A stretch of DNA of 36,577 nucleotides from Vitrella brassicaformis CCMP3155. Its lineage: Eukaryota > Protista > Chromerida. The notes under the pieces are model-generated. The model ran no database searches and was not told where the DNA came from. It saw nothing but the letters and a program-made list of their open reading frames with translations. Position numbers and translations under genes: made by a program. Positions 14,356 to 20,806 of the stretch are shown one piece after another (the first letter of the stretch is position 1; every line of letters starts with the position of its first letter). The DNA is taken from contig CDMY01000650.1 in the NCBI GenBank assembly GCA_001179505.1, positions 1-36,577 of the forward strand. Reading direction: 5' to 3'.

Positions 14356-14792
14356 GCTGCTGTTCTCGTGTTGCTCTTGTCGTCGGATGATGCCGTGTCA
14401 TCCTTCCTCGGTTGTCGCGTCTTCCGTCGAGAGATCAGATCAGATCACGTCACGCTGTGTCGAGAGATCTTCGGGAGATCAACCGGTGTAGACCAAAACA
14501 AGCGCACAGACAGACTGGGAGAGACCCAAAAGTCGGGAAGAGTCCTCTCCTCTCCTTCATCAGAAGCTCGCAGAAAAGCTCGCAAAAGAAAAAATTGTCC
14601 GTCTCGAGAACCCCGTCAGATCTCGTCAAGAGGTAAGCCGAGGTGAAGGCGAGCAGGTGACCACGAAAACGAGACGGCTCCACCATTCACTTTCGCTCTC
14701 CAGGTGTGGATTGCAGATCTAGAGTCCTTCGTGCGAGGAGTCGCTGTTAATAACCATCCGTCCGTCGGCACTGAGTGCAAGCGCATCGCATT

Positions 14793-15239
14793 ATGGCACC
14801 GCCCAAGAGAATATCGACCAGAGTCAAGGAGGAGCTCGGTATGCCAGCTTAGCTTGGACCATGACAGTACAGTCACTGTGGGTGGATGGGATGCTGTCAA
14901 CGATGTGTGTGTCGCATAGATGAGGTGACTAAGATGGTGGAGAAGATGGAGAATGAGCTCAAGGCCGCCCACAAAGCAGAGCTCGAGAAGAAGGACAAAG
15001 AAATCGCAGAGCTCAAGACGTGAGCACACAGCAGACCAACCATTGCAATTGGCAACGAACCGACATTGGCAATACCTATGTGTGTCGACTCGGCTCAAAC
15101 TGCTGCTTGTCAGGAAGCTGGAGAAAGACGAGGTGAGCACAGTGACGCACACACACGAGGGAGGGAGGGAGGGGTAGGGTGTGTGAGCGGGTGTGAAGTG
15201 AATGTGTGTGCGTCTGATCAGACGCCCTCCGGCAAATGA
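14793..15239 (+). CDS. 60-aa coiled-coil microprotein, 4 coding exons
   Basis: Joining three canonical GT-AG introns gives MAPPKRISTRVKEELDEVTKMVEKMENELKAAHKAELEKKDKEIAELKTKLEKDETPSGK*. Additional GT-AG introns are plausible in the 5' and 3' UTRs. Confidence 0.6.
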
Positions 15240-15693
15240 GACTTTTCAACACGTACGGCACGTCAGAATGCACACGGAGCCAGACAGACATGCACACCCA
15301 ATCACGCACTGACAGGCAGGTGTGATTTGTGTTTGCAGGTAGAACAACACGAGGCACACACGACCGACACCTGTGCGGCCTCTGGGCGCGGCGCGGCGCG
15401 TGGCACTTAGGTCGGTCTTCCTTACAGGCGGGATGATGGAGCGTAGGTGGTTGCACACAACACAGCACACTGCCTAGTCTTTATATACTTACGGCATCTA
15501 TGTGTGTATATGTGTCGATACGAACGCACTTTATGTAGTAAGCCACTTTTGCCTTGCCCCTGACGTGTGCTGTGCGTGTGGGCTTAGAGGTTGGGGCGAA
15601 GGAAGGGACTCGAGTCACGCTACTCATTGGTAGTAGCTAAACGTCTGTGTGTGGCCGTCCATCGATCCCTATGTTCAGCCAGCCACAGCACAT

Positions 15694-18013
15694 TCACCTA
15701 GCCGATTCCTTGTCAAGCGTCACAGCCCACCTTCCACCCCTCACACGCATCACCTCCCGCACTCGCATCCCACACACACTCTCGCCCTCCTCCAGCACAT
15801 CGACAACTGCCATGCCACCCATGGCTCTCCCAGACAGCACCAGCACCACACTGCTCACATCCCCCCTGCCGCCCAGGTGCGACAGCACCGAGTCGAGAGC
15901 AGTTCTGTCCTCAGCACGACGGTCGTCTCCAGGCCACAACAGCACGCACACCACTCTGCTGCCGCTGCTGTCGTCGTCTTCGCAAGTGGCTTGTGTCAGG
16001 TCAGGCGTGCTCGTCAGGTGGTGCTGGAGGGAGAGGGGTGTGGCCGCTGAGGGTGTGGTGTCAGAGTCTCCATGGCAGGGAGGGGAGGGCGGCACGTAGA
16101 GGGCGTGGTAGGCGATGCTCGGGGCGGGGGCGGGGGCGGGGCCATTGTCGTCGTGGCTTTGCTCGGACAGATAGGGCAGCAGGTGGGCGTCGATCGCACC
16201 CATCAGCTCAAGCTGAAGCTGCGTGTGGACACACACACACACATACATACCCACACGTACGGCAGACGGCATTCATTAATGCATCGACCCACCTTGCGGA
16301 CGTGGGTGTTTCTGGTGTGGCTTTGCCTCTCGGCCTCCGCGCGCCGGCGGAGGGCACATTGCCTGTCGGTCACCAGCTCCCCATTGGCCACCGCCAGTCG
16401 CAGATCGGCCAACGAGTCGCAAGACGCTATCACGCCCTGAACCACTCAAGCGCAGGAAGGACACCAACCTTATCTCTCGGTGCACTTATTGCCTTGTGGG
16501 TCACCTTGAACGTGCCCCGATGTGTGTCGTGTGGTGTCTTGCGGCCGTGGTCCATCACCATGGCCGCCATCCGCCCCTCTCCACACATGGGCACCCACAC
16601 ATGCCAACCACCGCCACACTCTCCCTCCCTCTCGACCAGGCGGCTGACGATGCGGCGCATGACGGTCGGCGGCAGACGCCCCGGGAGCGAGTCGTCATCC
16701 TGCGCTTGCTTGCCTGCGTCACGGTGGCGGTGCAGCAGACGATTGGCCAACACATCCGGGGCGAGGAGAGGTGCATCCACAGCAGCCGGACTCGGGTGGG
16801 CTTCGATGCAGAAGTGGCGGTACCGCTCGTTCTCTCTCTTTCTGTCCGCCATTTGCATGTGGAAGGCTCCCGGCCTTGCCCTGCGGTAGCGCCACACCTT
16901 CACCGGCCTGGTGGTGGACGAGGGTGGTGAGAAGAAGTGCTCGATCTCCCTCGCCGCCTGGCTGGGGGCGTCGGGGCCGTGCACCTTGTTGGTGACCAGC
17001 AGCAGGGCCTCATAAGCCGAAGGGTCGCCCGCAAAGGGCCCCGCCCACTCGACGCGCAGCCGCTGCTTGAGCCGCAGCCACGCGCCGGTCGCACCACCGG
17101 CAGGGCGCTCGAGCAGCCACCCCTCCACCATCCCACTGCATACCCACACACACACACACACACACATGAAGGATGCATCTCTTGCCGTCTGAGAAAGTCA
17201 CCTGGAGAGGTATTCAGCCGCGGCGTCATGGCGCGTCAGGTTGAAGGAAGACCCGTCGTTCATTTCTGCGGTATCGTCAGGATCGTCAGGCCAGCCCCAT
17301 GAGCACCACAGGAAGGCCATCGCCTCTTGGAGCGTCCACTGTCGGCTCTCACGTAGCCGAATGGTGAAGCCTTCTCGCTTGAGCCGCTGCTCCAACACAC
17401 CACGATACCCATGGCCGTCCTGAATGAAAGCAACCACAGACACACACACACACACACACATTCACCGTGCCGGACGCTCGCTTCTCTCATTTCTCGCATT
17501 ACCTACCGGCTTGATCAGAGCGAAGGTGACGTCTGAGCGGCACACCTCAATCGCAGCCTGGCCATCGCCTCGTGCAGTGGCAGACAGCCTGAGCCGCGAA
17601 ACACGGCCACTTCTTCTTCTCTGCTGATGGGCGCATCTGGTGTGCAGAGGCCGTGGCTGTGTCAGCAGCAGTGCCAATGCGGCAGGGATGCAGAAACAGA
17701 CGGCGGCGATGAGCAAACTCACGATGGAATGAATGGATCTCACGAAATCCGGGCAAGCGGAGCTGCCCGAATGGCTCCCTGGGGCCGGGAAAGGCACAGA
17801 TCTCTCTTCTCCCTTCTCGCCTTCTTCAGCAAGCTCAGCTGCCAGCTCGCACGCGGTGAGAGGGAACCGCTCCTCCTGTAAGAGGGAAGAGGAGAAGGCG
17901 TCAGATCCATGTCCATTGGCGCATGATGGACGTGACTGATGAGTTCTTTCGCGTCGTGAAGAGGCTCCGGCCCGGCCTGAGGGTGGCACCGCTGCAGCCG
18001 AACGAGTCGCCAT
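15694..18013 (-). CDS. Putative TM + nucleoside-diphosphate-kinase domain + SAM-methyltransferase-like domain fusion protein
   Basis: Splicing at 17506 gives TFALIKP|DGHGYRGVLEQRLKREGF, followed by EYLS|SGMVEGWLLE and TNKVHGPDAPSQAAREIEHFF (NDK motifs). Then come LPPTVMRRIVSRL...VWVPMCGEGRMA (motif I-like) and ALYVPP. The start codon is uncertain. Confidence 0.7.
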
Positions 18014-19375
18014 TCGCCGCCATGTCCATGCAAATCGTCAGTGAGCCGACACACACACACAGAGTCGCACACACACACCAGCATGACCAATGGGAGACCG
18101 CTTCAATGCTTGTGTGTTTGTGGTGTGGTGCAGATGTCGAACCTGGTTCGTGCAGAGCGTCTGTTGGGCAACATGAGCGCCGCTGGCGGAAACGATGCAG
18201 CCACAGACCCATCAGGCACCACTGCCGTGTATGTCTGTCTGCACACACACAGACAGACAGACAATGGATGCCGTGTGTGTGTGTGTGTATGTGTGATTCT
18301 CTGAGTAGAGGCGTGATCCGGATGTGCAAAGAGGACATCCAGACGCTCGAGAGCGTGGTGGACGTCCACACCCACACCCACGCCGACGCGTCTTCTGCGG
18401 CGTCGCTGTCCGCCCACCGTCATGGAGTGGTGTCGTGCCTTTACGACTACCTGCAGACACTCGCACAGAGGCTGCAGCAGCTGGAGGTCAACAGAATGCA
18501 GCAGCAGCTGGAGGTCAAGCGGTGAGAAATGGGGGCCCAGGTGGTGGGGGAGGGGGTGATGGGATGGAATAGGACAATGAACTGGGTTTGTGGCTGGTCG
18601 TGTGTGTGGGTGTAGGTATTTCTCCGGGCCTGGGTATCGCGGCGGGCCGGTGAGGGTCAAGAACAACGCGCATATGCCGGTTGAGAGTACGCGAGCAATC
18701 CCACCCAACACAAATCCATCCATCCATCAATAGCCTCTCTCTCTCTCTCTGTGTCTGTGTGTGTGTGTGTGTGTGTAGGGAGCGACGCCTTGTCGTATGC
18801 GCCGGCTGCGTGGGGGGAGTCCACCTCTCTCGCTGTGGATGAGGCCACGCAGCAGCAGCTGTCGGCTCAGACGCAGCAGCTGCTCAACATGTACAACACC
18901 GACCTTGACGCACTCAGGTGAGCGGTGTTTGCACCAACGAAGAGGTGCTGGAGGGTGTGTGTGTGTGTGTGTGTCAGGGATGCGCAGAGCAAGGTGTCGG
19001 AGATCTCTCAGCTGATGGGCTTCTTCGCCACCAAAGTCGCTGAGCAAAACGAGCTGTGCGAACAGAGTGAGTACGGCAGTGGACGTCATGGGCGGGCGGA
19101 ATGACACCATTCATTCATCTGTCTGTCTGCGTGTGGTCAGTTGCCAGCATGGCTGGCGAGAGTGTGGAGCTGATGGGCAAGGCCGGCAGACACCTTTCCA
19201 AAGCCATCCAGAGATCCAACTCGTATGAAGGAAGTTTTCTCACATAACAGTGGGCTGCGCCATACGCGTGGATGTGTGTGTGTGTGTGTGTGTGTGCAGG
19301 TATCGGTTCTACTGCGTGATGTTCTTCATTGTGGCCTCGGTGATCTTGTTGGTTCTAGACTGGATCAAGTCGTAG
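17923..19375 (+). CDS. STX18: Syntaxin-18/Ufe1-like Qa-SNARE
   Basis: N-peptide MDVTDEFFRVV; AHRHGVVSCLYDYL; SNARE helix DAQSKVSEISQLMGFFATKVAEQNE; C-terminal TM YRFYCVMFFIVASVILLVLDWIKS*. Confidence 0.85.
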
Positions 19376-19679: not shown

Positions 19680-20806
19680 CGCCGGGCCGTGGTAGACCAT
19701 CAGCCCGGCCACCTGGCCCTTGGTAGCCGCCGCACCCAGACCTTTGACGCCGCCCATGTGTTGGCTCGCGTAGGCGTTGCCTGCACTTGCACCAGCTGCG
19801 GTGCCTGTCGCGGGTGCGCCTGCTGCCGCTGCTGCTGCTGTGGTGGTGGTGGTGCTCCGCTCCATGTCGGGCGTGAGATACTTGGCGCGAATGCGGTTCT
19901 GGCAGTAGAGGTCGAACAACACCTGAGCGGCCAGCCAAGAGAGATAGAGAGANNNNNNNNNNNNNNNNNNNNNNNNNNNNNNNNNNNNNNNNNNNNNNNN
20001 NNNNNNNNNNNNNNNNNNNNNNNNNNNNNNNNNNNNNNNNNNNNNNNNNNNNNNNNNNNNNNNNNNNNNNNNNNNNNNNNNNNNNNNNNNNNNNNNNNNN
20101 NNNNNNNNNNNNNNNNNNNNNNNNNNNNNNNNNNNNNNNNNNNNNNNNNNNNNNNNNNNNNNNNNNNNNNNNNNNNNNNNNNNNNNNNNNNNNNNNNNNN
20201 NNNNNNNNNNNNNNNNNNNNNNNNNNNNNNNNNNNNNNNNNNNNNNNNNNNNGGGTGGGGGGTGACCGACCTTCAGGTGGTGCAGCTGTGCATTGAGGAA
20301 GAGGAATCTGAATTCGCCCTGCGGCCCACCCAGCTGACGCACCAGCTCCACATTCACCTCATGTGCCATTTCCTGATAAACAGAACGGGCCAGGAGGGAG
20401 GCAACCAATCCACACACACACTCACACACACACACGCACACAGAGAGAGAGAGCGAGACGTCTTTCCTGAATGAGCGTACCAGCAGAGCAATGTCGCAGT
20501 GGTACTCCCACACACCAGCGGCACCAGCAGCACCAGAAGCAGCGGCGGCTCCCCCGCCCTTTGCTGCTGTGGTCTCTTTCTCTTTCCCGTCACCCTGCTG
20601 CTGCTGTTGCTGTTGCTGCTGCTGCTCTCGGAAGGCCCACTTTTCGTGTGGCGTGGGTGATGCGGCTGCGATGGGCGGCCTGATGGGTGTGGCCCAGCCC
20701 TTCTTGAGGGGCTCGTAGGCGATCAGACGGCCCTTCTCCTTCACCCTGGCCATGACGTCGTGGACGACCGCCTGAATCCAGCCACCCAGCCACCCCCCAT
20801 GTGCAG

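What the first reader, a model, noticed from the sequence alone, without database searches (positions are those of the whole stretch)
15694..17720. Apparent NDP-kinase / SAM-methyltransferase-like fusion with an N-terminal hydrophobic helix
Seen: a complete NDK motif series (IKPDG, SGMVEGWLLE, NKVHGPD, AAREIEHFF) that keeps the Lys and phospho-His. Positions matching NDK Tyr52, Arg105 and Ser120 look substituted. Downstream are LPPTVMRRIV..VWVPMCGEG (like the VxDPxCGSG motif I of amino-methyltransferases), VIASCD and ALYVPP (like DPPY). A segment SIVSLLIAAVCFCIPAALALLL precedes both. I know of no described protein with this architecture. Inference: a His-phosphorylation or nucleotide-sensing module coupled to a methyltransferase fold.
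Basis: partly seen in the sequence, partly recalled or inferred. Interest (0 to 1): 0.72.

Follow-up and report, generated by a model that had tools for sequence, protein, structure and literature searches.

The report
Degenerate NDK-like protein, orphan tail
This is a real, expressed, five-exon gene of the alga Vitrella brassicaformis that encodes a badly eroded nucleoside-diphosphate-kinase-like domain followed by a long tail with no detectable relatives, and the proposed methyltransferase half rests on a six-residue motif that no profile or fold test supports.

Summary
They belong to one spliced gene of Vitrella brassicaformis CCMP3155, already deposited as a 525-aa "unnamed protein product" that UniRef names NDK. 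Transcript contigs confirm the splicing. The NDK C-terminal motifs and the supposed methyltransferase motif I lie on the same uninterrupted exon, so the two halves are one transcript.

The N-terminal ~165 residues are a genuine but degenerate NDK domain. Pfam NDK scores 28.4 bits against a cut-off of 27, and the best solved relatives are NDK and NME7 at E about 7e-5. Lys12, Asn115, His118 and Glu129 are kept. Tyr52, Arg105 and Ser120 are lost, Arg88 and Thr94 probably too, and there is an insert of about 18 residues.

The hydrophobic helix lies upstream of the annotated start, and whether it is translated is unsettled.

Verdict: a lineage-specific NDK-like protein with an orphan tail, probably non-catalytic. 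Low interest.

The parts
15694..15696 (-). Stop codon of the gene
   Evidence: Read directly from the sequence. It is the end of P0001.
15697..16218 (-). Exon E (174 codons). Contains ALYVPP, a Pro/Ser/Thr/Asp-rich stretch modelled at low confidence, and the C-terminal alpha/beta domain.
   Evidence: Identical to P0001 residues 352-525. Codon-position GC is 0.70/0.51/0.74, which is coding-like. X1 record 1 covers 15339-16113, and its length accounts for 16114-16218.
15697..16011 (-). C-terminal small alpha/beta domain (P0001 ~421-525; order beta-beta-alpha-beta-alpha-beta-beta). This is the only part of the tail modelled at pLDDT 60-80.
16219..16292 (-). Intron 4 (74 nt, GT..AG)
   Evidence: Splice sites. 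X1 record 1 has exactly 105 letters between 16113 and 16293, which equals 16114-16218. The P0001 junction agrees.
16293..16436 (-). Exon D (48 codons), containing VIASCD
   Evidence: X1 record 1 piece 16293-16435; P0001 residues 304-351.
16437..16504 (-). Intron 3 (68 nt, GT..AG)
   Evidence: Joint 16435->16504 seen directly in the X1 contig, with CT..AC on the + strand.
16505..17135 (-). Exon C. One uninterrupted exon carrying the C-terminal third of the NDK domain, a ~100-residue linker and the PMCGEG region.
   Evidence: X1 record 1 is continuous over 16504-17121. Matches P0001 residues 94-303 at 100% identity.
16979..16981 (-). Codon of the conserved catalytic-type histidine (His118 equivalent, P0001 His145) in NKVHGPD
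   Evidence: Alignments to solved NDK/NME7 chains and to the NDK domains of P0004.
16574..16591 (-). PMCGEG hexapeptide, the only stretch that aligns to a real N-methyltransferase motif I
   Evidence: BLASTP against the Vitrella RlmL-like ORF gives 5/6 identities, E 0.57. hmmsearch --max gives 0.1 bits. hhalign aligns 6 columns at probability 7.5%.
17136..17201 (-). Intron 2 (66 nt, GT..AG, phase 2)
   Evidence: Splice sites. The P0001 junction reads ..EYLS|S|GMVEGW. X1 record 2 carries 38 further letters beyond 17202.
17202..17419 (-). Exon B, the N-terminal two thirds of the NDK-like domain including the ~18-residue insert
   Evidence: X1 record 2 piece 17202-17418; P0001; alignment.
17420..17506 (-). 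Intron 1 (87 nt, GT..AG), which splits IKP|DG
   Evidence: The joint is seen within X1 record 2, pieces 17202-17418 and 17506-17810.
16925..17532 (-). Degenerate NDK-like domain (P0001 ~13-163; spans introns 1 and 2)
   Evidence: Pfam PF00334 scores 28.4 bits, E 1.7e-6, on P0001:1-175. PDB NDK 5x00 gives E 7.1e-5 and NME7 gives E 7.7e-5.
17533..17602 (-). Mini-intron of the deposited gene model (70 nt, GT..AG). It is retained in both transcript contigs.
   Evidence: Derived from the P0001 N-terminus MRPSAEKKKWP|Y against the sequence. X1 record 2 (17506-17810) and X2 record 7 (17536-17710) run through it without a gap.
17603..17636 (-). Annotated first coding exon. Its ATG at 17634-17636 is the first ATG downstream of the transcript contig's 5' end.
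   Evidence: P0001; sequence.
17660..17728 (-). Hydrophobic segment (mean Kyte-Doolittle 2.7 over 19 residues) in the open frame upstream of the annotated start. It is transcribed; translation is unproven.
   Evidence: Hydropathy; transcript coverage. The only in-frame ATG is at 18013, in a stretch whose codon-position GC is not coding-like (0.68/0.65/0.52).

Best explanation
This is a single-copy, expressed, five-exon nuclear gene of Vitrella brassicaformis CCMP3155. Its product starts with a strongly diverged NDK-fold domain of the group II (NME7/NME5-like) flavour. That domain keeps the phospho-acceptor His, the Lys of IKPD, the Asn of NxxH and the Glu of REI. It has lost most of the side chains that hold the nucleotide phosphates (Tyr52, Arg105, Ser120, probably Arg88 and Thr94), and it carries an insert of about 18 residues.

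The remaining ~360 residues are lineage-specific: a basic linker, a long charged helix, a stretch rich in Pro, Ser, Thr and Asp, and a small C-terminal alpha/beta domain. None has a detectable relative.

The most likely mode of action (inferred, not shown) is that of other eroded NDK modules, such as the second domain of NME7, flagellar NDK5/RSP23 and the C-terminal domain of RP2. In these the fold serves as a structural or interaction platform, possibly with residual His autophosphorylation, rather than as a bulk NDP kinase. The genome has a separate canonical NDK for that job. The C-terminal part is not a demonstrable methyltransferase.
For: Organism and gene. G000 has 72,700,666 bases in 1064 contigs, which matches the Vitrella CCMP3155 assembly exactly (PMC4501334). 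P0001 is named as a Vitrella protein.

Gene structure and expression. Spliced transcript contigs in two runs show the A/B and C/D joints directly, and contig lengths account for the D/E and B/C joints. Exon C is continuous across the NDK-to-tail boundary. The four introns are GT..AG, 66-87 nt long, and the exon lengths sum in frame. Exons B-E show coding-type GC3 of 0.69-0.81.

NDK domain. Pfam gives 28.4 bits, E 1.7e-6. PDB NDK, NME7, FAP67 and RSP23 chains match.

A canonical NDK gene with all motifs intact sits elsewhere in the genome, on C337.

Orphan tail. An exhaustive phmmer search of 1.84 billion representatives with exon C finds only the protein itself, TPR false hits on HGPD, and one multi-NDK protein at E 6e-4. 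The word search on residues 230-525 finds only the protein itself. There is no paralogue in the genome. There is no Pfam or PDB sequence hit.

Literature. Group II NME proteins and flagellar NDK5 can act through structure rather than canonical NDK activity (PMC13256974; PMC5662260 abstract).
Against: His118, Lys12, Asn115 and Glu129 are all retained. This could mean that phosphotransfer still occurs, since NME6 was long thought inactive until a partner was found (PMC13256974).

The Arg88/Thr94 mapping is alignment-dependent.

No structural model of usable confidence exists for the NDK part; pLDDT is below 50.

The ESM feature search listed several class I MTase clusters among its sub-threshold hits, at 0.86. 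A very remote MTase origin of the tail is therefore not excluded.

The functional role as a scaffold is an analogy and was not tested.
Confidence: 0.62

Rival explanations
1. One reading: a fusion of a His-phosphorylation or nucleotide-sensing NDK module with a class I SAM-dependent amino-methyltransferase (Trm11/Trm14/RlmL/HemK-like) domain, possibly a decayed pseudo-enzyme of that origin.
Against: No MTase family appears in Pfam at E up to 10 on the whole region or on slices. PF01170 searched over the whole genome at E up to 10 does not pick up this locus. A custom 107-sequence RlmL/Trm14 profile run with --max gives 0.1 bits, which 57 of 2000 shuffles reach. hhalign gives probability 7.5% over 6 columns. 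Motif IV is VPPS, lacking both D/N and the aromatic residue, and the motif I Asp is Val. A 43-residue charged helix and a ~45-residue low-complexity insert interrupt the supposed core. Structural hits are tied with unrelated folds and lie below the level the tool calls meaningful.
Confidence: 0.08
2. The last ~100-150 residues are a decayed GNAT (acyl-CoA N-acyltransferase)-like domain, which would make the protein an NDK-like/GNAT-like fusion.
Against: The model has mean pLDDT 54.7. Only the C-terminal half of a GNAT is covered. No GNAT Pfam family hits. The stretch after the strand VVCVLLWP reads GDDRRAED, with no Q/RxxGxG/A pyrophosphate-binding loop (sequence). NUDT N-terminal domains, FemA, IF3-C and Trm14 score equally or better in VIA.
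Confidence: 0.1
3. The true protein is the longer 674-codon form that begins at ATG 18013 and carries the hydrophobic segment as a membrane anchor. This would tether the NDK-like module to a membrane.
For: The frame is open from 18013 to the IKP codons. Both transcript contigs retain the annotated mini-intron, so in those molecules the annotated ATG gives only a 29-codon upstream ORF. The segment is strongly hydrophobic (KD 2.7) and is followed by an Arg-rich stretch.
Against: The X1 contig ends at 17810, and the depth bookkeeping leaves 17811-17839 uncovered. ATG 18013 lies antisense inside the first coding exon (17923-18036) of the divergent + strand gene, whose GC3 is 0.84. The minus frame there has GC 0.68/0.65/0.52, which is not coding-like. 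Non-coding frames of 150-300 codons are common in this GC-rich region. Contigs drop rare splice forms (tool note).
Confidence: 0.25

Closest known systems
Group II NME/NDK-domain proteins (NME7 domain A; Chlamydomonas FAP67; NDK5/RSP23)
   Same: They share the NDK fold signature TxALIKPD ... GF ... SG ... NxxHGPD ... AAREhExFF. The HGPD and AARE-E-FF strings are those of the first NME7 domain. As in this group, the NDK module is fused to unrelated extensions, and some members work without canonical NDK activity (PMC5662260, PMC13256974).
   Different: There is no DM10, Dpy-30, IQ or thioredoxin partner domain. Erosion is far stronger: the Pfam score is just at the cut-off, Tyr52 and Arg105 are lost, and there is an 18-residue insert. 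The C-terminal extension has no relatives at all. No orthologue was detected outside Vitrella.
Canonical group I NDK (Pfam PF00334; Vitrella copy on contig C337)
   Same: It shares Lys12, Asn115, His118 and Glu129 and the overall order of secondary-structure motifs.
   Different: The canonical copy scores 103 + 75 bits over its two exons and keeps Y52, R88, T94, R105 and S120. This protein scores 24-28 bits and lacks them.
THUMP/UPF0020 N-methyltransferases (RlmL, Trm14, Trm11; Pfam PF01170)
   Different: There is no profile-level similarity. The NPPY catalytic motif is absent, and there is no THUMP domain. Vitrella has bona fide members elsewhere (P0006).

Membership tests
Nucleoside diphosphate kinase (Pfam PF00334, NDK fold) | Profile match at or above the Pfam gathering score | tested here: met
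   P0001:1-175 scores 28.4 bits against a cut-off of 27, E 1.7e-6. The whole protein scores 24.3 bits, just below the cut-off. Single exons score 14.9 bits or less. The match is marginal but specific, and it is backed by 30+ solved NDK chains.
Nucleoside diphosphate kinase (Pfam PF00334, NDK fold) | Phospho-acceptor histidine in NxxHGSD (His118) with Lys12, Asn115 and Glu129 | tested here: met
   IKPD, NKVHGPD and AAREIE align to the corresponding motifs of NME7, 5x00 and P0004.
Nucleoside diphosphate kinase (Pfam PF00334, NDK fold) | Nucleotide-phosphate-binding residues Tyr52, Arg88, Thr94, Arg105 and Ser120 (the residue list is from my own knowledge of NDK structures) | tested here: not met
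   Tyr52 is replaced by Leu or Met, Arg105 by Glu or Ser, and Ser120 by Pro. Arg88 and Thr94 are not matched in the MAFFT alignment, and the local alignment does not extend over that region.
Nucleoside diphosphate kinase (Pfam PF00334, NDK fold) | NDP kinase activity or His autophosphorylation | not testable with these tools
   Needs purified protein and a coupled assay or a pHis blot.
Class I SAM-dependent methyltransferase (amino-MTase type: PF01170/HemK/MTS) | Profile-level sequence similarity to any MTase family | tested here: not met
   Pfam at E up to 10 on the whole region and on slices gives none. The genome-wide PF01170 search misses the locus. The custom profile gives 0.1 bits, which is shuffle-level. 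hhalign gives probability 7.5%.
Class I SAM-dependent methyltransferase (amino-MTase type: PF01170/HemK/MTS) | Motif I (h-h-D/E-h-G-x-G-x-G, or DPxCGSG) plus an acidic residue ending beta2 | tested here: inconclusive
   VWVPMCGEG and VIASCD are present, but the motif I Asp is Val. The region is modelled at pLDDT below 50, with a strand where helix A should be.
Class I SAM-dependent methyltransferase (amino-MTase type: PF01170/HemK/MTS) | Catalytic motif IV (D/N)PP(Y/F/W) | tested here: not met
   The sequence reads LYVPPSPP. The D/N position is Val and the aromatic position is Ser. The real family consensus is vtNPPYG (output).
Class I SAM-dependent methyltransferase (amino-MTase type: PF01170/HemK/MTS) | Seven-stranded Rossmann-like fold | tested here: inconclusive
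   Single-sequence AF2 gives mean pLDDT 54.7. There is no whole-domain MTase match. Only the last ~100 residues tie weakly to Trm14, among unrelated folds.
GNAT acyltransferase | Q/RxxGxG/A acyl-CoA pyrophosphate loop between beta4 and alpha3, plus a Pfam GNAT profile match | tested here: not met
   The loop reads PGDDRRAED, and no GNAT family appears in Pfam. The only support is weak Foldseek hits at E 4e-3.

The most novel reading that the evidence does not exclude
The tail is the relic of an amino-methyltransferase (RlmL/Trm14/HemK-type) captured by an NDK-like gene in the Vitrella lineage. It has decayed beyond profile detection but still folds as a Rossmann-like nucleotide- or SAM-binding module. 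That would give a two-pseudoenzyme sensor in which a phospho-His-competent NDK relic is coupled to a ligand-binding MTase relic.
Probability: 0.07. Interest if true: 0.45.

Novelty: new member of a known kind. Interest (0 to 1): 0.2.

Why it matters
It matters little beyond annotation. The result corrects a tempting "new fusion enzyme" reading. It also shows that the UniRef name "Nucleoside diphosphate kinase" overstates what this protein can probably do.

It adds one more case to the growing list of eroded NDK-fold modules that keep the histidine but lose the nucleotide-binding arginines. It also flags a probable error, or minor isoform, at the 5' end of the deposited gene model.

If the protein were shown to be flagellar or cytoskeletal in Vitrella zoospores, it would be a lineage-specific addition to the group II NDK repertoire of alveolates.

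Tried and rejected
- Exon-by-exon Pfam and PDB searches gave only a weak NDK C-terminal hit.
- The word search with exon C was blank within its length limits.
- The ESM Atlas feature search on exon E gave no usable hit. On residues 240-525 all scores were below 0.9.
- A TPMT-like reading of VPMCG (TPMT has VPLCGK; from memory) was considered. Pfam TPMT does not hit the protein, and the only genomic TPMT match is elsewhere, so it was dropped.
- Whole-protein AF2 was unusable at pLDDT 36. I therefore ran no fold search on the NDK part.
- The TPR proteins P0002, P0003 and P0005 in the exhaustive search are repeat-driven false positives on the string HGPDHP.
- Literature searches for Vitrella plus NDK found no papers.
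All analyses of the spliced protein used the database's own record P0001. The alternative 674-codon form that includes exon A was never assembled, searched or folded as a joined sequence. That step is left out, as the operators instruct.
- Read laying was called once, with 5001 letters.

Full report
**Where the window comes from**

The window's genome (G000) has 72,700,666 bases in 1064 contigs. That is exactly the size and scaffold number published for Vitrella brassicaformis CCMP3155 (PMC4501334). The protein recovered below is labelled as a Vitrella CCMP3155 product. The sequence is eukaryotic, about 58-65% G+C, with short GT..AG introns full of (TG)n repeats.

**Gene model**

The finding lies on the minus strand. 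Reading the sequence gave these exons:
- A: ending at 17507.
- B: 17202-17419.
- C: 16505-17135.
- D: 16293-16436.
- E: 15697-16218.
- Stop codon: 15694-15696.

The introns are 87, 66, 68 and 74 nt long, all GT..AG. The exon lengths add up in frame.

Transcript evidence comes from run X1. It is labelled only as a guessed RNA run, but it holds spliced contigs:
- The C/D joint (16435->16504, CT..AC on the + strand) is seen directly.
- The A/B joint is seen directly within one 560-nt contig (17202-17418 joined to 17506-17810).
- The D/E joint follows from the contig having exactly 105 letters between 16113 and 16293.
- The B/C joint follows from 38 further letters beyond 17202.
- A second run, X2, of the same study, holds matching fragments.

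Most important for the finding, the X1 contig is continuous over 16504-17121. The NDK C-terminal motifs and the supposed methyltransferase motif I therefore lie on one exon and in one open frame.

Exons B-E also show a coding-type GC pattern, with GC3 of 0.69-0.81.

**The deposited protein**

Family scans of the single exons left the protein open, and the word search was blank. I then ran the exhaustive phmmer search with exon C. It returned P0001, a 525-aa protein identical to exons B-E. NCBI names it "unnamed protein product [Vitrella brassicaformis CCMP3155]" and UniRef names it "Nucleoside diphosphate kinase".

I used this database record for every analysis that needs the spliced protein. 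The longer form that includes exon A was never assembled or searched as a joined sequence.

**The NDK half**

On P0001:1-175 the Pfam NDK profile scores 28.4 bits (cut-off 27), E 1.7e-6. On the whole protein it scores 24.3 bits.

More than thirty solved NDK chains match. The best are a bacterial NDK (5x00, E 7.1e-5) and NME7 from axonemal doublet structures (E 7.7e-5). Chlamydomonas FAP67 and RSP23 are also listed. The strings TFALIKPDG, GFTI, HGPD and AAREIEHFF are closest to the first NDK domain of NME7.

I aligned the domain with the repeated NDK domains of P0004 and with Vitrella's own canonical NDK. The outcome for the active-site positions, which I recall from the NDK structural literature, is:
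- Kept: the equivalents of Lys12, Asn115, His118 (codon 16979-16981) and Glu129.
- Lost: Tyr52 is Leu or Met, Arg105 is Glu or Ser, and Ser120 is Pro.
- Not recognisably kept: Arg88 and Thr94.
- An insert of about 18 residues follows the Tyr52 site.

The genome has a separate, fully canonical NDK (103 and 75 bits over two exons; sequence). This gene is therefore not the housekeeping enzyme.

**The C-terminal half**

Residues 230-525 give no relatives by any sequence method:
- No Pfam family at E up to 10 except noise, either whole or in six slices.
- No solved-structure sequence hit.
- No paralogue in the genome.
- Nothing but the protein itself in the word search.
- Exon C, which includes its first 65 residues, found no homologue among 1.84 billion representatives. 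The other hits were TPR false positives on HGPDHP and one multi-NDK protein.

I tested the methyltransferase idea directly. Vitrella has bona fide THUMP/UPF0020 methyltransferases (P0006).
- Pairwise BLASTP of the tail against one of them aligns only PMCGEG with PMCGSG, E 0.57.
- I built a profile from 107 RlmL/Trm14-type domains and ran it without filters. It gives the tail 0.1 bits, which 57 of 2000 shuffles reach, and again aligns only that motif.
- hhalign gives probability 7.5% over six columns.
- The supposed motif IV reads VPPS instead of (D/N)PPY.

**Structure prediction**

No homologues are available, so only single-sequence AlphaFold runs were possible.
- The whole protein gave mean pLDDT 36.
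- Residues 244-525 gave 54.7, with only the last ~100 residues at 60-80.

Fold searches on the second model gave these results:
- Foldseek's best matches are GNAT acetyltransferases (Naa50, E 4e-3). A few methyltransferases appear at E about 0.1.
- The Atlas shape search is similar.
- The ESM feature search listed several class I methyltransferase clusters, but all at 0.86, below its own threshold for a lead.

I conclude that the tail ends in a small generic alpha/beta domain. A methyltransferase fold is not supported, though it cannot be formally excluded with such a weak model.

**The hydrophobic helix**

The segment (about 17660-17728) is real, strongly hydrophobic and transcribed. It lies upstream of the annotated start.

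The deposited model starts at ATG 17634-17636 and removes a 70-nt mini-intron (17533-17602) to reach the NDK frame. Both transcript contigs retain that stretch while splicing the next intron. In those molecules the annotated ATG opens only a 29-codon upstream frame.

The alternative is the long frame, and its only ATG is at 18013. Three observations weigh against it:
- The X1 contig stops at 17810, and 17811-17839 appear uncovered.
- ATG 18013 lies antisense within the first coding exon of the divergent + strand gene (17923-18036, GC3 0.84).
- The minus frame there is not coding-like, at 0.68/0.65/0.52.

Long accidental open frames are common in this region. I regard the N-terminus as unsettled and give the membrane-anchored form about one chance in four.

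**Interpretation**

This is a lineage-specific gene combining a decayed group-II-type NDK module with an orphan extension.

By analogy with NME7's second domain, flagellar NDK5/RSP23 and other eroded NDK folds, the module most likely serves as a structural or interaction platform. Structure rather than NDK activity matters for those proteins (PMC5662260; PMC13256974). Residual histidine autophosphorylation is possible. This is inference only.

The NDK-methyltransferase fusion is not supported.

**Earlier notes of this scan**

These covered only this same finding and unrelated features elsewhere in the window. They did not affect the reading.

Noticed in passing
window 17533-17636 (minus strand): The deposited gene model's first exon and 70-nt mini-intron are not supported by the transcript contigs of X1 and X2. 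Those contigs retain the 'intron' while splicing the next one. This is a likely annotation artefact or a minor isoform.
   Followed up: partly
window 14702-15447 (+ strand): A convergent neighbouring gene has RNA-supported GT..AG introns (14838-14918, 15253-15338). It appears to have a 16-nt micro-exon: the letters AAGCTGGAGAAAGACG lie between 15020 and 15220 in the contigs. One X1 contig runs from this gene straight into the 3' end of the NDK-like gene, so the two convergent transcripts overlap or abut at their 3' ends.
   Followed up: no
window 17923-19141 (+ strand): A divergent neighbouring gene starts at ATG 17923. Its RNA-supported introns are 18037-18133, 18521-18614 and 19067-19140. 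Its first coding exon is only about 110-290 nt from the 5' end of the NDK-like gene's transcript contig, which suggests a shared bidirectional promoter region.
   Followed up: no
G000:C55:41591-42424 (L016) and P0006: Vitrella encodes a THUMP + UPF0020 (RlmL/Trm14-type) methyltransferase with an insert of about 100 residues between motif I and the rest of the domain. Three related hits lie on the same contig, C55.
   Followed up: no
window ~19900-20300: A run of N (an assembly gap) interrupts ORFs on both strands. The windows at 20-22 kb and 25-26 kb show a drop in G+C to 0.40-0.45, which may reflect such gaps.
   Followed up: no
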